A DNA stretch of 64,000 bases, from NCBI RefSeq assembly GCF_902652985.1, contig NC_047027.1:33976001-34040000 (forward strand). Direction: 5' to 3'. The stretch comes from Pecten maximus. Taxonomy: Eukaryota. Below are positions 34,451 to 64,000 of the stretch, one piece after another; the stretch's first letter is position 1, and every line of letters begins with the position of its first letter. The notes beneath the pieces are model-generated. The model worked only from the letters and a program-made list of their open reading frames with translations. It was not told the origin of the DNA and did not search any database. Both the position numbers and the translations under genes were made by a program.

Positions 34451-37034
34451 TGTTATAAAAAACACGATTTTGTAGCCTTGCCAAGGTTTTCTGTTTAATA
34501 TGATATTGTCAATAAAGGCATGATTGATATCACATGCCGAAGTTTACTTTATTCTCGGTCGTTAAGCGACAAATAATATTTTTTTACGGGGTGACAGTAA
34601 TAGTTGTCCAGGACAGTGTACTATCAAGGACGGCCATTTAGTACACAATAACGGTCATGTGATACACATCTCGCCCTCGCGTGAGGATATGTGAAACTGA
34701 GTCAGCATATTTATATAATGGTTTACAATATTATAAGGTGGTAGTTTTACTTGACCAAACCTGTATTCAATATTCTGTAATGTATTGTTAGGATTATATA
34801 AACGAAAGCACCAATTAGTAACATCATTTAAGTTAATTTTGTACATGATGTAGCTGAACAATAATATTGATTCATTTAGGTATAATTTTTACCCTTGCTT
34901 GTAACAAGCATTTTGATTGGCTAAAAATATGTAATCAGACCATAACGTAGAAATTACGTCACTGTTTGTCATGTCGTTTTTAACTGGCTGATACAGATGC
35001 GTCATACAAATATCGTCAATAAAGGTGTAATTCTACATTGATTGTGTATAACATATGCAATCATAAAGATTAGTTGAATATGTGTTTATGGTATGGAGCT
35101 ATTACACAAAAAAGAAGTGTTCCTTCTTTACTAACTGCATCGCGGTTAATTTAGAGTAAAATTCTTCTTACTTTTATTTGTATTATACCTCCATAACATA
35201 AACAAATGTAAAAACACCTTTTGTAAATAACGCTTTACCAACTATATACAAAAGTTACTGAACCTTATTTTTCGATATAATCTGTAAGTCATTCACAATT
35301 TGAGGTGGTTTCGGGTACATGCATTAACACACTTGCTTGAATTCCAGCGTCAACACACAACATAATATTAAGAAACATGTCCTCTAATAAGGCATAAAAA
35401 TGAATATATTTAATAAACTATTTATATAGTATAACAATTCTTAAATATTTTTTCTTTTCAAAGTTACATCTCTTATTAAGCTCAATATTTAAATGTTTCA
35501 TACAAATGTTATGATTATATTCAGATTCGAAATTTGAAGTTCATATTGTACTGTATTATAACTTAATATACATATTGTTGCCTTGAGGAGAGAACTAATA
35601 TATACCTGTTGTTAAATCATTTTTTCTTAATCAAATAGAATGTGCTGAGATTGAAATATAAGATTGAACATGAAAACAACGACAATGTTGCCGTCTTGCA
35701 AATTAAGGTTAATGTTGTGTTCTATCCCTTGTCTCAGTATATTATATGAAATGCACACTGTTGTACATTGTTCCAACTTGAACATTCCGATGACGTCATG
35801 TTAACATATTCCCCGTTGTGTCTGCACCGTTGTTTTATTTTTGTTTGTGTTTCAGTGTGTTGTTTTCCATTCGTTTCGGTATGTTTTAATTCAGGAAATA
35901 ATGCTATACATCATCAGGCATTATAAAGTAGACTTTGTCAGTGCATTCGTAATAGTTTATTCTTAAATCCTTAACCAAATGTTTAATGATTTATGTCTTT
36001 AACTATTGCAACAACACATCCATTTAAAGCGTTTAACGATTCAAAATTGATGGTTATATCTTGCACAGTTTTGTCATCTCCTTGAGTAACATTGAGTCGA
36101 AGCTGCACTTTGACACCAAGACCTCCATCATTGGCCTGCTACTGCCCTGTCCACTGGAATACAAATTATCATGTTATAAACAAGTATACGTGCCTCGACT
36201 CGAATTAGCGACCCTTCGAACAATCACCAGGCCAAAATCATGCTACTAGACAAGTTAACTGATATAGCTTGTTCGTACAAACTTATTGGTTTGATCAGCT
36301 AATGGCATAAAGGACATACTCGTCGTTTCATATAAGATTCGAATACTTCAGCTCCGTTGTGTTATAGCTTGTTATACCGAATTAACGCAGTGATTGCTGT
36401 TTTCATTTTATACGGGGTGTGTAGATTAACTAAACTCAAACTTATATTTACTATTTACTTTCGTTTTCCCAGCAGCTTCCAAAAGTACCAGTACATTGTG
36501 AAAGTCAACAGAATCTTTTGGTCTGTTTTATCGCAGTGCTGTCGTGAACTGGTACAAATGTAAAACATGTGGTAGGACTTTTAATCTAAGTGTCCGTATA
36601 TGTTTCTGGCCTTTAAACACAAGCAACAAACAAATCTCTTTCTAAAACAGTCTCAGATGTTATTTATCTGTCACGAAGTTAGTCCAGTTTGTACATGAAA
36701 TACGAGATTTGTCAAAAATTGTGCGGAATGAATTGCATTTAGAAAATTAATTGGCTTGATAAAACCTCCGGGAACGTTTTTTTTTCTTAAACGCTAGAGG
36801 GTTTCCGTTTAAAATTTGGAGAAAAAAATGTCTTGCTTTATAGGTGTCATATGTTTTCAGTCAACAAATCCCACAATGCACTTTCCCATCCAAAAACAGT
36901 TTAAAATAATTATTTACCATAACCCTATATAATAACAAAATTGAATGTATTTGCAAAATGATTTATTTATCAAAGAAAATCAGAGATCCATTATAATCAA
37001 TTGTCTTTTCTGTCTTTTGTTTTTTTCTTTGAAA

Positions 37035-37425
37035 TGTCTTTTATATTAATTGTCTTTTTTATTAATTGACTTTTCTATTAATTGTCATTTCTATTAATTG
37101 TCTTTTCTATTAATTGTCTTTTCTATTAATTGTCTTTTCTATTCATTGTCTTTTCTATTTATTGTCTTTTCTATTAACTGTCTTTTCTATTAATTGTCTT
37201 TTCTATTCATTGTCTTTTCTATTAATTGTCATTTCTATTAATTGTCTTTTCTATTAATTGTCTTTTCTGTGAATTGTCTTTTCTATTCATTGTCTTTTAT
37301 ATTAATTGTCTTTTCTATTAATTGTCTTTTCTATTCATTGTCTTTTCTGTGAATTGTCTTTTCTATTCATTGTCTTTTCTATTCATTGTCTTTTATATTC
37401 CTTGTTTTTTCTATTAATTGTCTTT
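37035..37425. repeat. 16-bp minisatellite, ~24 copies
   Basis: Unit attgtcttttctatta (37081, 37097, ...). Confidence 0.93.
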
Positions 37426-38391
37426 CTGTTCACTGTCGAACCATCTTATATCAAATGAAGATCAAAGAATGTATTCTTAAATAGATGTATAAATCACAGG
37501 TCATATATATGTAGATATATACCCGTTTTTAGCCACTTCAATATAGCATAATGCTGCATGCAACCCTCACACTGTTATTAAGATAGAATGGTGACGGGTT
37601 GGCATCTCACTCGTGGGTTATCATCGGGTAGTCCGGTGTCCTACCACAGTAAGACATCTCCGGGATTCCACCAGTGTCAACAATAGTGATGAGAACTATA
37701 ATATATTTCACAATTGTTGTTATACAGACTATATGTTCATTTATTTGTATATCACATTGACGCCAAGGAATGAAATAATGAGAAAGATTGACCGAAACTC
37801 ACATGAGTGGTAACTGTATTTAATGAAACAAAACAAAAAACAAAAAATACAAAAAACAAAAAAATCATAAACAAAAAAAACCCCGCGAAATTGCGTTTCT
37901 TTATCGTTCAAGACTAGTTGTTAATATATATAGCTTAAATGTTTAATCAAATGTACGAAAGACTAACAATAGCAATGTAATATAAATCGTATGGAGTACT
38001 GTCCTACGATTGGTGTACAAACCCATCTCTTCTTACCTCCAATGACTTCCCGTTAATTTCAAAGGCAATACTATACCAACCAATATATCATAAAATGTTT
38101 CGCTTCTAATCAACCTGTCAAGTATCCAGCTAAGTTGTTGATAGATGTAAACATCCCCAGATCTCTTTATTGATGTAATCTACACTTTCTTCACATGTGT
38201 ATTTGGCTAATGGGCAATATCTATCTTACACATGCTACAATGGATGTTACTGCATAGGTGACAAAGACGACATGCTATATCCGTGGTATATATTGCACAG
38301 TGTGTAGTATACGATCACGTTTCGTCCAGCCCTGCTTTCACACTCTTCGACTGTCCGTCCACGGCCACGCACTGACCCTCCGCTCTCAGCC

Positions 38392-41300
38392 ATGTACAAA
38401 CTATCCGGAATCGTGTTCTGTGGCTGTCTAGCGCTGGGGTGTAAGTATTATTGTTACAATTTCATTATATATGGGATTTTTATCTAATATGATTTATATT
38501 AATAATGACATGTACTATATGTTTGAAATACAATCCCTTATTGAAAATAAAATAAAATTACTAGATTTGTTAATGTTTAAGCATAAAAACTGATATATTT
38601 GATATTTTTAGGAGTATGACTTTTATAATTTATATTTAATGCAAAGAAATACGATTTCTTTAAAAAAAAACTTCTTTAATAGATTATAATAGTTCGTGTA
38701 TGCTTAGTTACTGGAGGAGAATTTGAATAATAATTTACGAAATATGCAATTGAAACTAATTGCATCTGCTTATATTATATATACATTTAGAAGTTGTCTA
38801 TGGTTTGTCTTTTCAATTCATATTGATTTCATACTGGCATACACTTTTATATTATTGTTAAGTCGGCGAGACAAGACATAATCCGATTAAACTTCAATAA
38901 AACGGAGACGTAATTCTAACTGAAAATCAATTAAACTTGCGCAAAATTTGAACACAGAATATAGATTTAGAGGCCGATTTATGATTCATCAGAATAAATC
39001 AAATTGTTTTACTAGGATTTTCCCCATGTTTATTTGTTTATTGATATTCATTCATATATGTTTTTAATGGTGCATTTTTTTTTTATTATTTATTTATTGT
39101 TTCATTTATTTAAATATATATTTATTTATTTATTTATTTATAGTGATTTATTTATTTATTTTATTGTTTTAAATATGGAAGTGACACACATTTCATACTT
39201 ATAACAAATCTACACTTGCTAAAATGTAGCCGTAATAGATAGTCCACGTTAACTTGGTAAGAGAGCTAGTTACCTTGGTGATGATATTTGCGCTTATTGC
39301 CTACTTATCATGACAAAAATAGCCTCTTCAATTGACAGGTTCCAAAAATAAATATCAACTAAAACATGTCATGATTGTGGCGTCTGATGGTCATATCATG
39401 TCAGCTAAACAGTTTTACGACAGTAATTGTACTTGTGCTACATAAATCTGACATTAGATAGCAGTGGTGTGTACTGGTTCCTTACTAAGTCTTTTGGTTG
39501 CCTGACAACGGTCTCTCATAATGACGTCACAGATTTGTTGTTGTGTTACTAAAATAGGTTGACAAGATATCGTGAGATAATGATGTGATTATTTGTTTGC
39601 TTGCTCGTTTTATCGCCCCGTGAGCAGTCAATGTCATTTTAGGTTGGGTATCCTTGAGGTAGTTAGTGACCACATCACTGAGCAACATAACGGATACCAG
39701 TCGTTTGCCACCCAGAGCAATTAGGTATAGTGTCTTGCCCCAGGACACAATCATGACTGTACACATCTGCCTGATTCTCAGCTTCCAGAAAAAACCCAAA
39801 GCAACACAGATAGGGAACTTCGAACTGTATAGTTCAGAATAAATCAGATGATGAAATGAAAAGCCAATTGATCAGAAGAAGTCTTCAAAATATGTCGTAC
39901 GTGCATGAGCAATACTGTACAAACTAAATCGTTACATAGAAGACATTGCCTTTTTTACGGTTCGTGACAAGTTCTGGTACCACGTGACTCTAACTGGTAG
40001 TTTACTTTTTATTGAACGAAAAGTAGAATCAGGAATCCCTTGCGGCAAAGGTTTTCCCAATGGTTGTGACGTCATAAAACCATAAAATTAATAACATATG
40101 CTATACTAGTATCGATTAAGTGATAATTTGAGAAAAATAAATGTTGCATACATCTCTATTGTCTGCAGATTAAAATGCTCTCATTTATACCGCATATAGA
40201 CGTCATCTCTCTTTTATACCATATACATGTATGGGCATTATTTCTCATTGATATACCATATATGGACATTATCGCTCATCTTTACTATATTTGGACATTA
40301 TCTCTTATACATACCATATATGGGCATTTCCATTCATATATACGTTATATGGTCTCTATTTCTTTTGACGATATACAAACAAATTATCACGATTAGTTAT
40401 GAACAAGTTCATGAACAATTTTGTTTCATTAACATTTATTGGACTACAACCCTGACGAAGCGAAGAAGGATTCAGACAAAAATATATCGCAAAATCAGAG
40501 GTATCAGTTTGCCATGATTTTAAGAAATTCCCCATCTTAAATTTACCCATAGAAACGTATTATAGAATTAAAGGTAAATTTCTGACAGTAAATATTCCTG
40601 ACATCAAATTATGCTTCCTATTGACAATTTTCAAATAATGAATTTATTTTAACTAAGGAACGTTGATGAGCCTGGAACCAGGCTTAATATCTAATTAAGC
40701 CTTAAGTAACAGATAAATAAGAACAAAAATTCCAATATTATTTTTTATTCACAGATGGGCTTTTCTTCGGAGAGGCACCGAACAGTCTGCTCGGAATGAG
40801 CGGAGGTTCCGGTATGACTGGAATGAGTGGTGGCGGCGGTGGAGGAGACATGTTTTCCTCTTTATTCGGAGGCTTTGGCGCCGGAATGGGCGCTGGTGCA
40901 GGTATGGGCGCACCTGCAGGTATGAGCGGTACTCCCGGTATGGGTATGGGCGCACCTGCAGGTATGGGCGCACCTGCAGGTATGGGCGCACCTGCAGGAG
41001 GGAATTCAATGGACTCAATGTTCCACGCACTAAGCAGGATGACGCTCTGTGGCGAGACTCCGTCACGGATCAGATACAAGACAAGAGGAAGTTGCAGCCC
41101 GTACGAGTGTAACAGGATGACAACCGGGCATGACGTAGCTTGTTTAGGTCACTCATGTTGTTGTAAAACATTTCAATGTACAGTGATGCTGGGTAAGTAC
41201 AGACTTTGGTTTTATACTATTATAAGTAGGATAATATATATCCATAAATTATCAATAATCAGCAATTACCGACAATGATCAGAATTCACAATAAGCATTC

Positions 41301-52607: not shown

Positions 52608-55244
52608 ATGTCATCGGTAATTCTAATCACGTCTTTTCTGGCGATATTGTCCTCAGGTAAGTTACTTGACAAACATATTGTATTGTTAATTTTATATGAT
52701 AACAATGACCCATATACTTACAACAAGGTCATAAATACTTCAAATATCATACACAGCTTATTTAAACATTGGTTTTCAGCCTGTTGTTACTGCTACGATT
52801 TTACGATAATTATTTGGCATGCGATGTACTTATTGCGTACTGCTTAATTCATATAAAGATGTATATAGATATTTGTGTTATTTCAGTATGTACAATTTTC
52901 TGATAATACAGTAATTGATACATGTAAATGAACTAAATGAGGTTGATGCTTAATGCAAATTTGATGAACAAACATATTCAACCATTTTTCAGTATATTTC
53001 AATTCACGTGGGTAGCGTGTCATAGCAGACTTGATTGATTGACACCCTTTTGGCGTTTTTTTTTATGGATTTCATTCATTTGAATTTCAGGTGTGATGGC
53101 GTTACTTCCGATGGAGCAGAGCATGAATGCCGACATCATGGCTGACGTTATGGACCTCAGAAGAAAGATAATGAAACATCAGATGTTATTGGCTTCTATT
53201 AGAGGGATAAAAGGTGGGAATCAGATTCTCCCTGCAGCTGCGATTGGTATGCGAGACTTCTTCCCACTTTTAGGAGGTGCTTTCCCTCCACAAGCATCAG
53301 GAACAAGTGGATCACAGATAGGTGGAAGTATGCCAGAAGTACCACCATCATTTCAAAATCTTGGAATCGCAAACCAAGGAACCGCACCACAAAAGAATAC
53401 TGGGAAACCTTCGAAAAAGAACAGCTCTATAAAGAATATAGACCAGAGCAGTGGCACTGTTTCATCACCAACACCAGAAGCTATTAATACGATGATTTCA
53501 TCATCAAATAATCAGTTCTCAATGGCCGATTTATTGAAGAATGGACCAATTGGTGGATCTAGTAACAATCCAATGGTTCCCCCTGTTAATACTAACCTAC
53601 AGATTAAAGGCTCATCAAGAACCCCCAAGGGGCAATCAGTGTCAGGTCAAGGGAAGGGAACAAAACCGGTAAAAAACCCAACCAAAGCTGGAGCTTCACA
53701 GATATCAGCACCATCTGGTAATGCAGGACAACCTGCCATGCCTTTTCCACAGCAATCGAGTCTTTCAGCTTTCAGGAAGTTCTATATACAACAAGAGTTA
53801 TGCTCTGAAACACCGTCCAGGCTAACAACGATGTGCAGCACGACGCTTGATTGCAGACATAACATGCAATGCTTTTCCGGAAGATGTTGTGCTTCTAGTC
53901 ACATACATGCTGAAATACTGGGTAAGTAGTTAATGCAGTTTTTTCAATAAATGTGATATAAATAGAGGTTACACAACGAGTGGTTGTTGGAAATGGAATT
54001 TATTTCACACGAGTAAGTTATTTTTTAAAAGTTACAAAAGACACAAGCTTTCACGAGTGTGAAATAAATGCCATTTCCAACAATTTCGAGTCGTGTGACC
54101 TGTTTCTACCACAATAATATCGGCTTGAATCAAAGGGAAACGTGGCCAAGCATAATTTCGCGTATGCAAATAAAGTGTACCGGTGACGTCCGGGACCCGG
54201 TGATGTGACGTCATTAGATTATTGATGACGTCAATAACAATTGCAGCTTGGGTCAAAGTTCACCGAGTTAGCCAATCAAAATGCGTACAGAGTTTATATC
54301 ACGTGTGGTATAAATAGATTGTTAATCAACAGCTGTAATGATTAACTGATGGTCTGAGAGTTGAATAACACAGGGTATTGTGGTAGAAATTAAAATAATA
54401 GCATGTTTAAACAGAGAAGTAAGAATACTAACGTTTGATGAGTTATTTCCAATGCATATGATATCAACGTAATTATAATGAGAAATTATAGAATTAAGAA
54501 ACAATGATATGATGTACTTTAATTGTTAAGTAATTAATTAAGTGTTTGCAATAGATGCGATATTAATTTAAACAATTACAAAATTTAAACAGAGTAGCTA
54601 GAGAATTACAAAACAGCTGTATGAGTTATGGTCAATGCATATGATATAAACGTAGGCGTACATAATTAAACTGCGAAGTTATAGAATAAGAAACAATGAA
54701 GTGCTATACTTTAATTGTTTCATCCTAGCTCTAGATTATATAGCTTTTTATATGTTTCGACTGGGATACCTTATTCAGTGAGTATATTTGTATAATCTAC
54801 TGAATTTATACCGACATATCTGTGATGCAAACATCATCATAATATCTAAATATGCATACTTCCTGACATCGGTAAACATCTGATGGAGTGGAAGTTGAAA
54901 TATCCCAGTTGAATTATTTTAAGATTACAATTCAGCATAATACGTTCCGACTCCTAAAACTGTAGAAATGTTTAAACTTTTATACGGTAGAATACACCTT
55001 ATAGATTCCGACATTTAATGATATTGAGCGGAAAATTTATCTAGAAAATTCAAGCCGTACACATAAAAATGTTTGCCATCTTATAAAAATTGTTCGAGCG
55101 TGAAACTGTATATTCTTTTCATTGTATAAATATTTGAGCATTTAATGCCGAATGATATTTTTTAATGCTTGCGCGTATTAACAGGGAATCCCTTTGTTTT
55201 ATTTTACAGACAACATGCTTGAACAGCCAGGAATGCGACTGTGA
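52608..55244 (+). CDS. Secreted Met/Gly/Ser/Pro-rich protein with C-terminal LCSETPSR Cys module (cluster gene C), ~304 aa
   Basis: Exon 1 52608-52656 (MSSVILITSFLAILSS, 49 nt, G|GTAAGT). Exon 2 53091-53921 (GVMALLPMEQSM...LCSETPSRLTTMCSTTLDCRHNMQCFSGRCCASSHIHAEIL, G|GTAAGT). Exon 3 55210-55244 (DNMLEQPGMRL*). AATAAA at ~55467. Confidence 0.87.
53960..54390. mobile_element. Fold-back/MITE-like element in gene C intron 2
   Basis: ~53965-54012 (gttggaaatggaatttatttcacac) pairs with ~54052-54100. tttctaccacaata (54102-54115) pairs with tattgtggtagaaa (54376-54389). Confidence 0.65.
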
Positions 55245-56039
55245 GGACCCGATATATAAATATAGGTCTGTGCCATTGTGACATCCACTTTTTCATTTCT
55301 ATATTTATTCATGAAGTGAGATGTATATGAATTAATCATATACATACAACACTGTTTCCATTTTTTTCATTTTTTGCTAATTTATATGCTTGCTACGTGC
55401 TCAGAAGCAGAGACTTTTAGTTATTTATGGTGCTTGTGTCGTTGGCACAGCTGTTTAATGCTTGTTAATAAATTTTAAAAGATTTGTATTTTTTTGTTTT
55501 GCTTGATTCTGTGAAACTCCAAATATATCTGGGATCACCTATGATAGCATACAGTATGTACTGCTGGTAAATTATTAAAGTGATTCCAACGGAAAATCGA
55601 CGATAAAATAGCTAATAATATATCTATATACAAAGTGACATACTTGTTCAAAACGTACATTTAGACTCGGACCATACGTTTCCAAAATGCAAGCGTCTTC
55701 AGCTTCATCGATGTTACGGAAACGCTTGTATAGTTCCATAGCACTAAAACATGTCATTCAATAATATATTTTAAAGTAATGCGTCAGGGAAAGTTGCAAT
55801 ATCCATTAATGGTAAAATATAGGTATTATGTTATATACACAGCGTAACAGATACATATATTTTAACATCCGAGAGCGGGTATTGCCTTGAAAGATAATAC
55901 ATTTCAACCTGAAATGTTCTTGCGACTGTTTTAAGTGTATATAGGTATATCATATAGCCCTTCGTCCATCATTATTATCGTCACGTTTTACTAGTTCTTG
56001 CATGTTGTTCTTGTAATAGTATAAGATTTTATTACAATT

Positions 56040-56455
56040 TTACCAGTGAAATATCGAAAATTATTTATTCTACAAAAGTGATATTTTAGTGAAAAATATC
56101 ACGGTTTCTTATTTGACCAATCAGAACACTGCTTACAAACGAGAATGGGGTGAATTAAGATTTGCATATAACTAACCGTTATGTTATATGACGTCATAAG
56201 GCAAGGTATAATACATAACGTCAAGATTTGGAGTACTTTTATGGGTCGTTGACAGGGGACCGTAATGAATTCTGGGAGAGATTAAGCTGACTCAGTATAT
56301 TTTGCTATCAAATGTCATAAACAGAATATCTAACAGGATCTTCAGTAATACCAAATATATTTTACTCGTGTGGCCAATATTTTGATACTATTCACTTGTG
56401 CTGATATCAAAATATTAGCATCACTCGTGAAATATAGCTGTATTACTGAAAACAT
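56040..56455 (+). mobile_element. Non-autonomous DNA element with terminal hairpin, copy 1
   Basis: Shares cagtgaaatat.gaaaat, gaccaatca...aaacga.aatg and the terminal hairpin tcttcagtaatac...aatattttgata/tatcaaaatatt...gtattactgaa with 63600-63962. Confidence 0.65.
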
Positions 56456-57712: not shown

Positions 57713-59369
57713 CCCATCCAAATTAGAAAGTAGAAAAATTGTAACGATTTAATTGTTCGCTGCATCATTTAAATACGGATTCTTTATTCTATCTATATTT
57801 GTATTGTTTAAATCTGCTTACCATCGTCCATGTGACATTGCATTCACTGGAAACGCATTTTCATATTATTCTGCTTTGATTTTTAGAGACTTAGAACCAA
57901 TCCTTTCGCCAATTTGGCAGGGGGCGTTTAACTGTGCTACAGTTATCGGGATCCTTAGTATGATATTTAATCGAGGAGTTAATGCGATGCTCACGTATTA
58001 TGTCTGTCTAAAAAGTACACATATACAATCTGTACGTGTCATTATGTGTAATACGTCGTGTCTTAACTGTCATATAAATGCGACACAGGTTACTGATGCT
58101 GTTTATTCAGTATCAGATACATTACATTCTGAATGATGAGTAAGGACAAATGTTGAACTATGAAAAGGGTGACGTATAAACTGCATTACTTCATCTTATT
58201 TTATTTTACTTGGAAATTTGAGGATTCTAAAAGATTGTGATGTACCACTACTTATACACATGGTAGGCAAACGTAACATATCAATATTTTATAGATATCA
58301 AATCCTAAATCAAACAATTGACTCCCTTCCTGCTGCAGAAAGACGGCACGATTCCCTTACGATATTACATATTTCAGTTAACATATTGACACTTTCTCTA
58401 AGCTACAGTAAAACAGATATTGTTATTTCTATTCAAAGAATATAATTACTATGTAGGCCTTATATGTAGTTTTATCATTAATAGTGCAATATAACTCTAT
58501 TGACATCTTCCAGATACATTGGGTTATAAAAAGAGGATCTGCCGTAAGTGGCTATGTCACATGGAATCGATCGAGCGAGTTTAATATTTTGTGTCATGAA
58601 CCTGTCGAAGAGAGGTATGTAACAGTATTCAACGAGTCTACTTTAAGCAACATTATACAGCCACGGATTTAAAATTCTGTTTATCATGTATGAATCGGCT
58701 GAGATGATTTTTCACAAATATGGAGATTGACGGTATGATTTGTTAACCTAAACTTAAGTTTGTCAGTATTGTCTTTGATATTGATATGTAGGTTGGCATG
58801 GTAACACTAATATAATATCGGCTTATTAACACATAATTGCTTAAGCTACAGTAGCATCGCCACACTTATAATAAAGTGGACGTCGAGGGTCGTTACAATC
58901 ATAGTTTAGTGGGCAGTTTGTTTATTTTGCAATCATATCAAGGTCACCGTAGTGAATTGTTTCAATGATATCTTAGACAGCGACAAAGATTATACTTAAG
59001 TCGTCAGCGAGCATTGCTTAACAGTTCTATGATATAAATGTCAGTGGCGAGTTAAATTAAAATTATGCGTAAGTCGACGGTGAGTTTTTATCAACAATTA
59101 TATTAATTCCGCCGGCGAGAATTATTAAAATGATATTTAGGCGAGAACTGTTTCAATTCCATCAACTTCGACGACGAAGGTTGTTATCAAGTAAGCGATC
59201 AGGAAACAGCATTGTATAAGCAAGACATGTTACAATGATATTTCAGTCAGCAGCGTGACTAGATTCAGTTATATTTATGTCGACGATGAGGATTGTAACA
59301 ATCCGACAATTCGACAGCACGGTGAGCGACATTGCGCCATGAACGAAGCGACAATTCTTTATGCAATAA

Positions 59370-59506
59370 GCGACAGTGCGCCAAGCTAGAAGCGACGGTG
59401 CGCCAAGCTAGAAGTGACAGTGCGCCAAGCTAGAAGCGACGGTGCGCCAAGCTAGAAGCGACAGTGCGCCAAGCTAGAAGCGACAGTGCGCCAAGCGAGC
59501 AGCGAC
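59370..59506. repeat. 22-bp GC-rich minisatellite, ~6 copies
   Basis: Unit gcgacagtgcgccaagctagaa (59370, 59392, ...). Confidence 0.92.
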
Positions 59507-62500
59507 AGAATGAATGTGTTATACGACAGTCCGACATAAACAAATATATTTTAGAACATTGTGCCGTTTATTATTTTCAATTTGTTGGGGGGAAACACCA
59601 TTATACGAGAATTGATACATGATTGAGATGTGATGCAGCCAAACAGAACGAAATAAAAAAAAGATAAAAAATAAAAGTATTTTATGTGGTTACTTTAAAC
59701 AATATTGAATATTGGCACGTATATGACGATATATCATCGAGGTGTCATTCTTTACATAACTTTGAGAGGATAAACACCTAATCTACGTCTGAGGGAATGC
59801 ACTATTTGTACCGTAAAAAACAAAAATAGAAATAAATTTTAAATATATATTTGTATTCCGGTCTGTTTTTTTGAAAGTGATTGTAACCAGGCGCCATGCT
59901 TGTTCACACGACGGACAACACTGTGGTTGATTAAGTAAAGCACAACGTCAATAACCTACGGTCATGGCGCTCACGGAGGGAGGCCATGGGACAATTGGAA
60001 CAGCCAATCTCGTTTCGGCTCTAAAAATAGCAACCAATCAAATGCACCAATACATAATAAACTTTTTTGTGTAATATATTTTGGGGATCCCCGCCATGGA
60101 GGTTGCCATCAAAACATGTGTTTCAGATGATCAATGAATTTTACGGACAAATACACATTTTATTATTTTTTTCATAATAGCGTCAATTTCTGATTGTAAT
60201 TTGCATTTAAACTATTATTTAAAATAGGTATTTCACTATCGAAAGACATTCCTTTGAAGGCCGTCATTACTGTATATAATCGAACCGAACCCACATGAAA
60301 TGTGTCTTCCCAGTGGTAAAAAAATCCTCTAGATATATTTTTGGGAAACAAAAAAAAAAGTGTATGAATCGTCCCACGGTTTTTGTCCGTGAGCGTCAAG
60401 ACAATGGGTTACCGAGAATTATAAACCAGGAATGTAAATATGGCAGATATCTGACTACACTGACACCTCACAAAAACATTTTAGGTAGGACTACTCTGGC
60501 GGCGTGGCGACTAGTATTAACGTCTAGAAAGTCAGTAAAATCGAGTGTTAGGTGTGAACTTACCTTTACACTAAAATATATGTTTATTACCTAAATATCC
60601 AAGCTAACCATTATTATAATATTTGTTATGATGTACGTGACAATGGCTAATGATGCAAACCACAATTAATAACCACGACTAATGGAAATGCTAATTAGAT
60701 ATAATGAATGTCAAAATCTCACAATGGCATGGTGACCGACAGTGATGGTCACTAAATAATAAAAAGATATTTGAATAAAATAGATTTGTATCCTTTAGTG
60801 GTTTACAGGCATGATTTTGGGGATTATGACCAATGGCTTTGCATCTCGTACCAGCCGGCGATGTAGGGTATAACCTCGGGGCTAATTGTCTGTGGTACTT
60901 GTTTCTCCAAAAGCCCCTCTACTGAACTAACGATGAGTATATATCACCTGTCATAGATCCCTATTCGAGGAATGGCAGTTAAATATGATGACACTTCAAA
61001 TATGTATCTGAATGGTACCGTCAACCCAGTCACCATCTCAACTAGGCTGTTATGACGACATAAATCCTTACTAAGCAATTTATCTTTACAGGAAATGACG
61101 GAAGATAAGCATAAAATCACAAATTAATGAATTTCTTAATTTTGCCAACTTCTAATTCAATATACATATTCTACCAATCAAGAAAAATTGTATCTGATGA
61201 AAAGGATAAAAACAAAATGGCACCTTATTACCTCAATAATGTTACCTAAAACACTATGTACTTTGTCGGCCACATCCCTGTTTTGTATATTACCTGTAGT
61301 ACAGTTTATATATACACTTTATTTTATCGCTAAATTATGTAATATTCAGTGTGAATCCCCAACAAATACCTCTAGTGACTCATGTCAATAAAATCTTGCT
61401 TTTTATATGCAGACATGGATTATTATCCTGGTCTTTTTTCCTGTGGGTTTCTTTGGATATTCAGATGGGCTACTTGAAGTACATCAGTTTCATGAAGTAG
61501 AGGGAGAACTGTCACCACGAAAACAGTTCGATTCTTCTGTCTAACAACAGTTCCAGTGATATCAGTGAAAATATTCTACATCAAACATACACAGTGTTTT
61601 ATTATTCTAAAACTGAATAATTCAGCTTTTGCTCCAATATGGAATCCGCCCTTGGTGATGTGGGTCAAAGATAAGGAAATCAGGATGGAAAGTCACACAA
61701 ATTAAGCCTCACCAAATTTCAAATATTTTAAGGGATTTGCTTTAACTCCACAATTGATAAAATGGAGTTAGATGGATTGTAACGTAAGGTTTGTTTCTTT
61801 CATTACGCTAATGGACGAAGTTAGGTCACCAAGTCTTTTGCCGACATCTGACATGGTATTCTAAGGCTTAAAAATGTGGATTGATTAATATACAAGTTAA
61901 ATTTCTATATTATGTAACACGTTGCTATCGAGCTTATTTTGTTGTTGTTGTTTTACCCTTTTCCTGGTGCTGATTACCGTATTCTATATGAAATGTAGTT
62001 CATGTATATTCTGCTAAATAAAACATCAAAGGAGGTAGACGGATTACGTACGTGGACTCCAACGTCAACTACTGCTGAAATGACTGATATCTAATTGTTA
62101 TATATATGTGTTGTATAAACTTTGACAAGGCATAGTTATTACAAAAATAAGTCGCTTACGTAAATGTGTGCTTAAACGTAAAAGGGTTTTCCCTGTTTTA
62201 ACAATTTGATGTATGATGTTTCTACTATTAGAAATCAAAAACGGCTACATTTACATTGAGAGTCAATTACATGTGACATGCAGCTAGCCTGCATATATTA
62301 GTGGGTGGAGTATAGCATCAATGACGTTCTTATATCCATCATTGCATTTAACATAACCACATTTAACGAAATATGCTAATCAATTGTAAATGATGACACA
62401 GTAAACCCACATGTCGTGATAATATATTAACAAATTCTCACGATAGCACTTTTCCTTGATATAACTAATATTTCATTCCAATACATTTTCATGATGATCT

Positions 62501-63599
62501 AAAGGTTGAGTCATAACAAAACTGAGACAATTAGATTGAAACGACAACCTAAACGCAATTAGGTTCAATGTCCCGGTCACCTTGGTCAGATTAGAAATAA
62601 GTATGTATAACAAGCGTCTTGGAATTAATAAAAATGTCATTTTGACGGCGATGACATCAATGTATACTTCTCTGGGGGTAAACAGCTTTTTGTTAAAGCT
62701 CGCACGTATATACATATCAATATGTTTTATTTTTTCATTATCTTATTGCATAAAGATAATAAATAACAAAGTAATTAAATATATACTTGACAACCATGTA
62801 ATTTATCAACTTACACTTGGACGTGATTAACGTTCGAAATACATTTTTGTTGTGGCATCAGGTAGTTAATTTGTTTTTAAGGATCTGTGATATATTTTGT
62901 TAACATGTTTATATATATATATATATATATATTTCCAGTATTAGTAACATTTAAATAACATTATATCTGGAAAAAAAACCCATTTTTATGTTCATGAAAT
63001 AGTTTATCACACCAACCATAAATTTTCTAAATAGGTTACACTTGCATGACATTATTTCAATCCATTAAATGATTGATAAGACTACTTAACAGAGGTTTGA
63101 AATTCTAATGAGGAAAATGAACCATCACTTCATCATCATTTTGGATAATATATCAGGGTGTCCATTACTTACACTAGCACACACCATGACATGATACGTC
63201 AAAAAACTATTGTAATGCGCGCTTAGAATATTATTCTACGAATGTTTGTGTGTGTGTGTTTAAGAATGATATCGCAGACAAGGATGTTTATCAAATTGTG
63301 AATATTTATAAGGTCGACGTCAAAGATGTGGACGTTTCGACAGCTGGCACAGACGTCGCGATTTTTAATGAGATCATGCTTTCGGCATCGCATACAGTAT
63401 AAATTGTGGTAATCCTGAGCAGTACGCCATCGACGGGAACTATTGTTTAATGCTGTTTCATACTATATAGAGCAGCAAGTGTTTAGCTTAATCTATTATC
63501 GTTCATTTTTTCACGAAAATGGATGTGCCATTTCTGTTTTCAATTTTGGTAACACTCCATATATCTGGTAAGTTTTTAAACCTTGTTATTCTAATGTAA

Positions 63600-63962
63600 A
63601 CAGTGAAATATTGAAAATAATATATTCTATAAAAGTGATATTTTTCTAATGAAAAATATTTCTTTTCCTTATATTTGTCACTTGTGAAATATATCATTTT
63701 TTCCTGATTAGACCAATCAAATCACTGTTGGCAAACGACAATGAAAGAAAAAAATCTGACCCGGTATTTTTTTTCTATAAAAAATGTGATAGATAGAATG
63801 TCTAACAATATCTTCCGTAATACCAAAAAGAGATTTCATTCGTTTTGCTAATTATATCATATATTGCTATTTTCCCATTCGTGCTGCGCATCAAAATATC
63901 AAAATATTAGCCTCACTCGAGAAATACATTTAGTATTACTGAAGAGAGTGTTAGATATCCTG
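63600..63962 (+). mobile_element. Non-autonomous DNA element with terminal hairpin, copy 2
   Basis: Homologous to 56040-56455. The terminal hairpin pairs agaatgtctaacaatatcttccgtaatac with gtattactgaagagagtgttagatatcct. Confidence 0.65.
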
Positions 63963-64000
63963 TATATATTGCATTATATAAGCTACAGCACATGACGATC

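What the first reader, a model, noticed from the sequence alone, without database searches (positions are those of the whole stretch)
38392..55244. Three-gene family of secreted proteins: shared exon structure and C-terminal 'LC(S/G)ETP(S/R)R' Cys module, with different low-complexity bodies
Seen: genes A (+), B (-) and C (+) each have a first coding exon of exactly 49 nt (16 hydrophobic codons + 1). Each has one large exon ending ...(M/I)L-G|GTAAGT just after the Cys module, and a tiny last exon. B and C share C-x9-C-x5-C-x5-C-x4-CC-A-x4-HAE(M/I)L; A has a longer 8-Cys version. The bodies differ in length (~164, 592 and 304 aa total) and composition. I do not recognise a named family, though the six-Cys pattern ending in CC loosely resembles lustrin/WR1/CC-type modules. 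Inference: a modular structural-protein system in which a conserved disulfide-bonded domain handles assembly or anchoring while the disordered part sets material properties. Repetitive low-complexity secreted proteins are typical of mollusc shell, ligament and byssus.
Basis: partly seen in the sequence, partly recalled or inferred. Interest (0 to 1): 0.78.

Follow-up and report, generated by a model that had tools for sequence, protein, structure and literature searches.

The report
Scallop-only secreted protein family, four genes
Four neighbouring king-scallop genes encode secreted proteins with very different floppy bodies and one shared small cysteine-rich end piece found only in scallops; their job is still unknown.

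Summary
The window is Pecten maximus. Genes A, B and C are real paralogues. A fourth member, D, starts at 63519 and runs past the window end; scan note s1-788646 had already flagged D. All four have a 49-nt signal exon, one large exon ending in phase 1 at G|GTAAGT just after the Cys module, and a short last exon.

The module occurs only four times in the 918-Mb genome. A profile search of 1.84 billion proteins gave 8 hits: 7 from four scallop species and 1 unnamed fragment. No Pfam or solved-structure sequence matches it. UniProt's "WAP" label on one orthologue fails my tests.

The module is better conserved than the rest in 7 of 7 orthologue pairs. Gene C is spliced as read in 4 of 4 runs and is very deep in one. 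B's large exon, as far as it was laid, is uncovered in all four, so co-expression of B and C was not seen.

Tissue and function are not shown. A structural-matrix role is plausible, since A has an abductin-like Gly/Met body, but it is inferred.

The parts
38392..38440 (+). Gene A, coding exon 1 (49 nt, hydrophobic signal-like peptide, phase 1)
   Evidence: Sequence. Donor is T|GTAAGT. Mean Kyte-Doolittle 2.13 over residues 4-16. The exon 1/2 reading agrees with orthologues P0009 and P0012.
40755..41192 (+). Gene A, large exon: Gly/Met/Ala-rich body plus 8-Cys module (module 41045-41191)
   Evidence: Translation. The 96-aa body is G33 M15 A14 %. Module identity to orthologues is 45 of 50 aligned columns against 44-47% for the rest.
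42726..42733 (+). Gene A, last exon (two codons, D-A, then stop)
   Evidence: Among acceptors with a pyrimidine-rich tract that I listed downstream, this has the joint-highest tract score, 16 of 20, tied with one at 43338. Orthologues P0009 and P0012 end in DA. No P. maximus protein for gene A was returned.
49499..49547 (-). Gene B, proposed coding exon 1 (49 nt, phase 1); absent from the RefSeq model
   Evidence: Sequence only. Donor is G|GTAAGT and TATAAAAG lies 61 nt upstream of the ATG. RefSeq P0006 starts at an internal Met of exon 2. No RNA contig covers it.
46926..48632 (-). Gene B, large exon: Ser/Thr/Asn/Arg-rich body with a poly-Arg block plus 6-Cys module (module 46927-47049)
   Evidence: Translation. 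It matches RefSeq 'mucin-5AC-like' P0006. Depth is 0 over 47950-48549 in 4 of 4 runs.
46673..46722 (-). Gene B, last exon (basic tail and stop)
   Evidence: Sequence. It agrees with the C-terminus of P0006.
52608..52656 (+). Gene C, coding exon 1 (49 nt)
   Evidence: RefSeq P0001. The joint 52656|53091, GT..AG, is seen in 4 of 4 runs.
53091..53921 (+). Gene C, large exon: Met-rich N-terminal motif, Ser/Gly/Pro/Gln body, 6-Cys module (53798-53920)
   Evidence: Translation, identical to P0001. Covered by contigs in 4 of 4 runs, with word depth 1e4-1e5 in X1.
55210..55244 (+). Gene C, last exon
   Evidence: P0001's C-terminus. The loose ends at 53921 carry this exon's first letters in 4 of 4 runs.
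63519..63567 (+). Gene D (fourth member), coding exon 1 (49 nt). Exon 2 is L004:512-1645 and exon 3 starts at L004:3013; both lie beyond the window end
   Evidence: It equals RefSeq LOC117340784, P0004, 415 aa.

Best explanation
This is a tandem array of four paralogous genes, restricted to the scallop family Pectinidae.

Each gene encodes a secreted protein with four parts:
1. A cleavable signal peptide (the 49-nt exon 1 plus the first residues of exon 2).
2. A disordered, fast-evolving body whose composition differs between paralogues. A is Gly/Met/Ala-rich. B is Ser/Thr/Asn-rich with a poly-Arg block. C is Ser/Gly/Pro/Gln/Met-rich. D is Thr/Ser/Lys-rich with a poly-Arg block.
3. A conserved disulfide-rich module of about 41 residues: C-x10-C-x5-C-x5-C-x4-CC, with 8 Cys in A.
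4. A short tail from exon 3.

Shown: the gene structures, the paralogy, the lineage restriction, the stronger conservation of the module, and the transcription and splicing of C.

Inferred: the module is the only folded, constrained part. It gives all four proteins one common interaction, either docking or disulfide cross-linking into an extracellular matrix or binding a common partner. The bodies supply different physical properties. The most likely setting is a matrix secreted by the mantle (shell, hinge ligament or periostracum). The array would have arisen by tandem duplication with rapid divergence of the bodies, as is usual for molluscan secretome genes.
For: Paralogy and shared structure:
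- Alignments.
- All four genes have a 49-nt exon 1 and phase-1 junctions.
- C and D also share an N-terminal Met-rich motif: BLASTP E 6e-19 over residues 1-116, and the own-genome search finds only C and D.
- B and D share a poly-Arg block.

A is a divergent member: hhalign of A-type against B/C/D-type modules gives probability 77.5% and E 1.9e-5, and 1 of 100 column shuffles reaches the observed score.

Copy number and spread:
- Only four module copies in the genome.
- 8 hits at E <= 0.001 in 1.84 billion representatives. Seven are from Pecten, Argopecten, Ylistrum and Mizuhopecten; one is an unnamed ENA fragment.

Constraint: the module is more conserved than the rest in 7 of 7 orthologue pairs, 61-90% against 25-58%.

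Secretion signals: the N-termini are hydrophobic, with mean KD 1.5-2.35.

Expression: C is spliced as predicted in 4 of 4 runs from 4 studies and reaches word depth up to about 1e5 in X1.

Variation in C's large exon: variable sites among the contigs are 15 nonsynonymous to 9 synonymous in exon 2 overall, but 1 to 2 in the module.

Link to matrix proteins:
- A's body is G33 M15 A14 %, close in kind to the abductin-like exon on contig C8, which is G67 M14 %.
- Mollusc secretomes are stated to be rich in lineage-restricted genes (passages of PMC8382897).
Against: - No tissue, protein-level or localisation evidence. Run names are coded, and no paper names these genes or their motifs.
- B's large exon is uncovered (47950-48549) in all 4 laid runs, including the one where C is very deep, so a jointly deployed 'system' is not seen.
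- The shares of words held by the 24 listed runs can be explained by C alone; this is my inference.
- A profile of B/C/D modules alone does not detect A (5.9-7.1 bits).
- A has no BLASTP alignment to the abductin-like exon, so that resemblance is compositional only.
- Signal peptides were judged by hydrophobicity and by orthologue alignment, not by a dedicated predictor.
The ESM Atlas models are poor, with pLDDT 0.43-0.45.
Confidence: 0.45

Rival explanations
1. These are secreted humoral or mucus proteins with a defence role. The Cys module would act as an antimicrobial or protease-inhibitor-like knot, and the polybasic, mucin-like bodies would bind microbes or mucus.
For: - UniProt names the Mizuhopecten orthologue 'WAP domain-containing protein'.
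- B and D are basic: K+R is 14.5-16.6%, with poly-Arg blocks.
- Nonsynonymous variants outnumber synonymous ones in C's body.
- Parts of the stretch are held by 16 of 24 listed runs from 7 studies.
- RefSeq's automatic names are mucin- or adhesin-like.
Against: - The WAP label fails. There is no Pfam WAP match at E <= 10.
- A genome-wide PF00095 scan finds 16 places, none in this cluster.
- hhalign against 12 of those 16 scallop WAP domains gives probability 14% (local) and 0.1% (global).
- B, C and D have six Cys, not eight.
- A's Gly/Met/Ala body is not mucin-like.
- The automatic names are low-complexity artefacts.
Confidence: 0.2
2. These are precursors of a secreted signalling peptide. 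The C-terminal module would be the active ligand, of prokineticin/astakine or Dickkopf type, released from a pro-region at basic sites.
For: - A weak, non-significant match of the C-x5-C-x4-CC-A core to prokineticin Bv8 (E 0.23, 19 residues).
- Dickkopf_N-bearing clusters are among the Atlas neighbours (TM 0.43-0.45).
- An R-K-R sits directly before the module in B and in its Argopecten orthologue.
- B and D have multibasic blocks.
Against: - The basic site before the module is absent in A, C and D.
- Prokineticins have ten Cys and an AVIT N-terminus (recalled). Neither is present here.
- The C/D N-terminal motif is itself conserved, which is unexpected for a mere pro-region.
- Word depth up to about 1e5 suits a bulk product better than a hormone.
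Confidence: 0.1
3. These are reproductive or larval-stage proteins (egg coat, sperm or larval secretion) whose rapid evolution reflects sexual or stage-specific selection.
For: - Rapid body divergence and lineage restriction.
- B is not seen in runs that express C, so members may be stage- or organ-specific.
- B and D carry protamine-like Arg blocks.
Against: - The signal-like N-termini argue against nuclear sperm proteins.
- C is held by runs of several studies.
- There is no zona pellucida domain or other reproductive domain.
- There is no positive evidence at all.
Confidence: 0.1
4. There is no real family: the shared motif and exon sizes are coincidence, or gene A is not a gene.
For: - A profile of B/C/D modules does not score A.
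- No P. maximus protein for A was returned.
- B's exon 1 is unconfirmed.
Against: - B, C and D match each other at E 2e-18 to 6e-24.
- RefSeq orthologues exist for all four types in other scallops.
- The A-type module is 90% conserved between species.
- hhalign of A against B/C/D gives probability 77.5%.
- C is transcribed and spliced.
Confidence: 0.02

Closest known systems
Lineage-restricted, tandemly duplicated low-complexity shell-matrix gene families of bivalves (for example shematrins and Lys-rich KRMPs of pearl oysters; these names are recalled, not from a call)
   Same: - Secreted proteins with a conserved signal and terminus and fast-evolving repetitive bodies.
- Tandem paralogues restricted to one bivalve lineage.
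- Mollusc secretomes are stated to hold many such genes (passages of PMC8382897).
   Different: - No sequence relation: only scallop hits plus one unnamed fragment in 1.84 billion representatives.
- The conserved piece here is a 6-Cys C-terminal module.
- Mantle expression and presence in shell are not shown for this family.
Abductin, the Gly/Met-rich rubber protein of the scallop hinge ligament
   Same: - Gene A's body is Gly/Met-rich: G33 M15 %, against G67 M14 % for the abductin-like exon on C8.
- Both are small secreted proteins.
- Both genes have a phase-1 signal exon and a phase-1 end of the large exon.
- The abductin motif and composition are taken from passages of PMC9999432.
   Different: - No BLASTP alignment at E <= 100.
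- A has GMGAPA-type repeats and 14% Ala instead of the GGFGGMGGGX decapeptide.
- A carries an 8-Cys module that the abductin-like exon lacks.
- The abductin-like genes lie on another contig, C8 at 22.78-22.87 Mb.
- The abductin-like gene's signal exon is 55 nt, not 49.
WAP four-disulfide-core domain (perlwapin and lustrin A in shells)
   Same: - A small Cys-rich module with a ...C-x5-C-x4/5-CC... core.
- One source names an orthologue 'WAP domain-containing'.
- WAP domains occur in shell proteomes, per passages of PMC5854119.
   Different: - Six Cys rather than eight in B, C and D.
- No Pfam WAP match.
- hhalign probability 14% local and 0.1% global.
Prokineticin/colipase/Dickkopf-N, EB and CC small disulfide modules
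   Same: - The local pattern C-x5-C-x4-CC-A, matching Bv8 at E 0.23.
- EB module at E 0.022-0.049.
- Atlas neighbours carry EB, CC or Dickkopf_N.
   Different: - All matches are below significance: EB scores 15.3 bits against a cut-off of 24.3, and all TM scores are <= 0.5 on a model with pLDDT 0.45.
- The Cys number and overall spacing differ.

Membership tests
WAP (PF00095) | Eight Cys in the four-disulfide-core spacing (…C-x5-C-x5-CC-x3-C-x3/4-C) | tested here: not met
   B, C and D modules have six Cys and nothing after CC. The scallop's own WAP domains show the full pattern.
WAP (PF00095) | Match to the family profile | tested here: not met
   No WAP hit at E <= 10 for 6 queries or for 11 modules. 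The genome scan gives 16 hits, none in C13:34.01-34.04 Mb. hhalign probability is 14% local and 0.1% global against 12 of those 16 domains.
Abductin | Tandem GGFGGMGGGX-type decapeptides with about 58-67% Gly | tested here: not met
   A's body is G33 M15 A14 % with GMGAPA repeats. The pattern search places the decapeptide genes on C8 only.
Abductin | Detectable sequence similarity | tested here: not met
   No local alignment at E <= 100.
Prokineticin/AVIT | Ten-Cys colipase fold and a significant profile match | tested here: not met
   Only 19 residues align to Bv8, at E 0.23. There is no Pfam prokineticin hit.
EB module (PF01683), CC (PF04942), Lustrin_cystein | Score above the Pfam gathering threshold | tested here: not met
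   EB scores 15.3 bits against a cut-off of 24.3, and only 2 of 11 modules match it at E <= 10. There are no CC or lustrin hits.
Molluscan shell/ligament matrix proteins (a functional class) | Expression in mantle epithelium and presence in the shell, ligament or byssus proteome | not testable with these tools
   Run names are coded. The supplementary protein lists of the P. maximus shell proteome (PMC5854119) are closed. The ids and motifs appear in no searched paper.
This new family (LC(S/G)ETP(S/R)R … CC module) | 49-nt phase-1 signal exon, large exon ending in phase 1 right after the module, short last exon | tested here: met
   Met by A, B, C and D. B's exon 1 rests on sequence only.
This new family (LC(S/G)ETP(S/R)R … CC module) | Module homology of the divergent A type | tested here: inconclusive
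   An HMM of the B/C/D types scores A at 5.9-7.1 bits. hhalign gives probability 77.5% and E 1.9e-5, and 1 of 100 shuffles is as high. Position in the cluster and exon plan support membership.

The most novel reading that the evidence does not exclude
The four genes are a scallop invention for the hinge ligament or shell matrix, and the conserved module is a previously undescribed disulfide docking or cross-linking domain.

Gene A in particular would be an abductin-like Gly/Met elastomer carrying its own covalent anchor. That would offer a candidate answer to how the scallop's rubber network is tied together; a review states that abductin's cross-links are still unknown (passages of PMC9999432).
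Probability: 0.12. Interest if true: 0.7.

Novelty: new variant of a known kind. Interest (0 to 1): 0.4.

Why it matters
If the matrix reading is right, this is a compact natural example of modular material design. One small, conserved disulfide module is fused to four very different disordered polymers: Gly/Met elastomer-like, mucin-like, polybasic, and Ser/Gly/Pro.

It would give biomaterials research a defined anchoring domain to test. It would also give scallop biology candidate components of the hinge ligament or shell.

Even without a function, the work has practical value:
- It defines a domain family that neither Pfam nor the searched papers hold.
- It adds a gene, A, for which the protein search returned no P. 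maximus entry.
- It suggests that the RefSeq model of B lacks its signal exon.
- It shows that several automatic names are low-complexity or sub-threshold artefacts: WAP domain-containing, mucin-5AC-like, dnaJ homolog subfamily C member 7, suppressor 2 of zeste-like.

As it stands, this is an orphan, lineage-restricted secreted family, a common kind of thing in mollusc genomes.

Tried and rejected
Domain and fold searches that led nowhere:
- Pfam on the three large-exon products and their modules: nothing but a sub-threshold EB hit.
- PDB sequence search with the module profile: thyroglobulin at E 0.074, Bv8 at 0.23, and one unrelated enzyme. I rejected all three as non-significant.
- ESM Atlas, two calls (36, 68): the models have pLDDT 0.43-0.45. 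The neighbours are bacterial and viral proteins at similar TM, so I treat both lists as uninformative.
- WAP was considered because of UniProt's name and the spacing. I rejected it.

Abductin homology of gene A: rejected. Only the composition is alike.

Searches for further paralogues through A's body and through the C/D N-terminal motif found none beyond the cluster.

Pfam on ten intergenic ORFs found nothing.

Literature: accession numbers, LOC ids and six 7-letter motifs are in no searched paper. For the scallop byssus secretome paper (PMC9168380, passages only) and the P. maximus shell proteome paper (PMC5854119, passages only), the passages returned for my search terms mention nothing like this family. 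Their protein lists are in supplements, which are closed and which I did not open. Those lists could bear directly on the shell and byssus question.

Tissue of expression could not be learned because run, sample and study names are coded.

I searched exon by exon and used the full-length RefSeq proteins that the tools returned.

Full report
WHAT THE SEQUENCE IS. The window is chromosome-scale contig C13 (33,976,001-34,040,000) of a 918-Mb assembly. The best protein hit names Pecten maximus, the king scallop.

CHECK OF THE OBSERVATION. I read the three genes directly and translated the large exons.
- Gene A (+): exon 1 38392-38440, exon 2 40755-41192, exon 3 42726-42733.
- Gene B (-): exon 1 49547-49499, exon 2 48632-46926, exon 3 46722-46673.
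- Gene C (+): exon 1 52608-52656, exon 2 53091-53921, exon 3 55210-55244.

All first coding exons are 49 nt. All junctions are phase 1. The donors after exon 1 and exon 2 are G|GTAAGT (T|GTAAGT after A's exon 1).

Independent support differs by gene:
- C equals RefSeq LOC117340782 (P0001, 304 aa) residue for residue. Contigs of four runs from four studies carry its exon 1-2 joint. In all four, the loose end at 53921 continues with the first letters of exon 3.
- A's junctions agree with RefSeq orthologues in Ylistrum balloti (P0009) and Argopecten irradians (P0012). Both read through the exon 1/2 boundary in the same way and end in D-A.
- B's exons 2-3 match RefSeq XP_033758444.1 (P0006, 578 aa). 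That model, and the Argopecten orthologue P0008, start at an internal Met with no signal peptide.

Small corrections:
- The module spacing in B and C is C-x10-C-x5-C-x5-C-x4-CC, not x9.
- B adds up to about 601 aa, not 592.
- A's module is C-x14-C-x4-C-x10-C-x4-CCC-x4-C.

A FOURTH MEMBER. A profile of the three modules, searched over the whole genome in six frames, found seven places at E <= 10. Four are at E <= 1.1e-18 (B, C, A and a new one 1.5 kb past the window end); the other three are at E 0.17-0.48.

The new gene, D, has its ATG at 63519 and again a 49-nt exon 1 (63519-67). It has a 1,134-nt large exon ending ...ML-G|GTAAGT and a short last exon. It equals RefSeq LOC117340784 (P0004, 415 aa). 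A first-reader note of the scan on the neighbouring window (s1-788646) had flagged D as an orphan secreted block-copolymer protein with a Cys knot.

D links the members:
- It shares with C an N-terminal Met-rich motif (BLASTP E 6e-19). In the whole genome only C and D have this motif.
- It shares with B a poly-Arg block and a hydrophobic motif before the module.

A's body has no other relative in the genome.

IS GENE A REALLY A MEMBER? A profile built from eight B/C/D-type modules scores the three A-type proteins at only 5.9-7.1 bits (E 34-80 at Z = 1e5). It scores the unnamed ENA fragment P0010 at 32.3 bits.

A profile-profile comparison of A-type against B/C/D-type gives probability 77.5%, E 1.9e-5 and score 28.3. 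One hundred column shuffles have mean 10.7 and sd 3.1, and one of them reached the observed score.

Other points in favour:
- The seven-of-eight identical LC.ETPSR motif.
- The CC at the same distance from the end of the exon.
- The identical exon plan.
- The position inside the cluster.

On this basis I accept A as a divergent member that gained a Cys pair. The sequence evidence alone is moderate.

SPREAD.
- The word-based search with C's large exon found 3 proteins among 1,041 candidates.
- The same search restricted to the module found 2 among 3 candidates.
- With A's large exon it found 2 among 1,952. None of these was a P. maximus protein, so gene A appears to be unannotated in that collection.
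- The exhaustive profile search of 1.84 billion representatives gave 8 proteins at E <= 0.001. By name, seven are from Pecten maximus, Argopecten irradians, Ylistrum balloti and Mizuhopecten yessoensis. One is an unnamed ENA protein on a 762-bp contig.

B- and A-type hits were found through the module positions alone. Module-bearing proteins with other bodies would therefore have been seen, yet no oyster, mussel or pearl-oyster protein appeared. At HMMER's sensitivity, the family is restricted to Pectinidae.

WHAT THE MODULE IS NOT.
- Pfam gives nothing but an EB-module hit at 15.3 bits against a cut-off of 24.3 (2 of 11 modules).
- The PDB sequence search gives nothing significant. The best-looking local match is the C-x5-C-x4-CC-A core of prokineticin Bv8, at E 0.23 over 19 residues.
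- UniProt calls the Mizuhopecten orthologue 'WAP domain-containing protein'. I tested this in three ways. A genome-wide PF00095 scan finds 16 WAP places, none in this cluster. The scallop's own WAP domains have all eight Cys. hhalign of the module against 12 of those 16 domains gives probability 14% (local, out of register) and 0.1% (global). WAP membership is rejected.
The ESM Atlas models of P0001 and P0012 are poor (pLDDT 0.45 and 0.43). Their nearest neighbours (TIL/WAP, EB, CC and Dickkopf_N for P0001; unrelated bacterial and viral proteins for P0012) are all near or below TM 0.5. The fold is open.

CONSTRAINT PATTERN. In 7 of 7 orthologue pairs the module is more conserved than the rest: 61-90% against 25-58% identity.

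Among contigs of four runs, C's large exon shows 24 variable sites. Fifteen are nonsynonymous and nine synonymous. In the module, one is a conservative change and two are synonymous. The sample is small.

The bodies differ sharply in composition:
- A's body: G33 M15 A14 %.
- B: S13 T13 R9 N8 %.
- C: S13 G9 P8 %.
- D: T11 S11 K10 %.

Met is raised to 6-11% in the A-, C- and D-type proteins of all four species.

EXPRESSION. Of the 24 runs listed for 46600-55300, 16 hold part of it, from 7 studies. None holds half of it.

I laid X1, X3, X4 and X11 (four studies) on 47950-53940:
- C's exons are covered in all four, with word depth of 1e4-1e5 in X1. The tool warns that contig depth is a poor measure of expression.
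- B's large exon, as far as it was laid (47950-48549), has depth 0 in all four.
- Only three low-depth 151-nt contigs lie in B's intron.

The shares are about what C's mRNA alone would give; this is my inference. So C is a real and, in some libraries, very abundant transcript. B was not seen together with it. Run, sample and study names are coded, so the tissue is unknown.

COMPARISON WITH ABDUCTIN. The Gly/Met body of A recalls abductin, the rubber of the scallop hinge. The passages of PMC9999432 give its motif as GGFGGMGGGX, with 58% Gly and cross-links 'still unknown'.

A pattern search places such repeats on contig C8 at 22.78-22.87 Mb. One such gene has a 55-nt phase-1 signal exon and a large exon of G67 M14 % with no Cys module. 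BLASTP finds no alignment with A.

A is therefore abductin-like in composition and general gene plan only. A follow-up note of the scan (s1-788486) describes abductin-like genes elsewhere in this genome. I saw that note after my own search.

READING. Shown:
- A four-gene tandem family restricted to scallops.
- Signal-like N-termini.
- A constrained Cys module on divergent disordered bodies.
- Transcription and splicing of C.

Inferred: the module gives a common docking or cross-linking function in a secreted matrix, probably of mantle origin. The bodies diversified after tandem duplication, as is typical of mollusc secretome genes (passages of PMC8382897).

The rivals cannot be excluded without tissue and protein data: defence or mucus proteins, precursors of a Cys-rich ligand, and reproductive or stage-specific proteins.

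VERDICT. This is an undescribed domain family of an ordinary kind (lineage-restricted secreted low-complexity proteins), with one attractive but unproven link to hinge-ligament biology. Interest 0.4.

LIMITS. 

Noticed in passing
window 63519-64000 and L004:512-3078 (beyond the window end): A fourth family member, D (RefSeq LOC117340784, 415 aa). It has the same 49-nt exon 1 and carries every motif that the other members share pairwise.
   Followed up: yes
window 38392-42733: The protein search returned no P. maximus protein for gene A. Only the Argopecten and Ylistrum orthologues came back, so the gene may be unannotated.
   Followed up: partly
window 49499-49547 (-): The RefSeq model of B ('mucin-5AC-like', P0006) and its Argopecten orthologue both start at an internal Met without a signal peptide. 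A 49-nt phase-1 exon with a TATA box upstream would supply one.
   Followed up: partly
proteins P0002, P0005, P0008, P0009, P0011: The automatic names of the orthologues look like low-complexity or sub-threshold artefacts: suppressor 2 of zeste-like, proteoglycan 4-like, serine-rich adhesin for platelets-like, dnaJ homolog subfamily C member 7, WAP domain-containing.
   Followed up: partly
G000:C8:22777575-22865686 (L011-L018, L022): A cluster of abductin-like genes with GGFGGMGGG repeats lies on another contig. One has a 55-nt phase-1 signal exon and a large exon of 67% Gly and 14% Met.
   Followed up: partly
window 37008-37505: A tandem array with a 16-nt period, about 0.5 kb long, lies just upstream of gene A.
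   Followed up: no
window 59303-59522: A tandem array with a 22-nt period lies between genes C and D.
   Followed up: no
window 56317-56387 and 63897-63967: 71-nt inverted arms, 82% complementary, lie downstream of C and inside D's first intron. By eye, the flanks around them are also alike (56040-56130 against 63620-63740). They may be copies of a small mobile element.
   Followed up: no
window 53223-53887: C's large exon differs at 24 sites among the contigs of four runs, 15 of them nonsynonymous. That is a high level of protein polymorphism in the body.
   Followed up: partly
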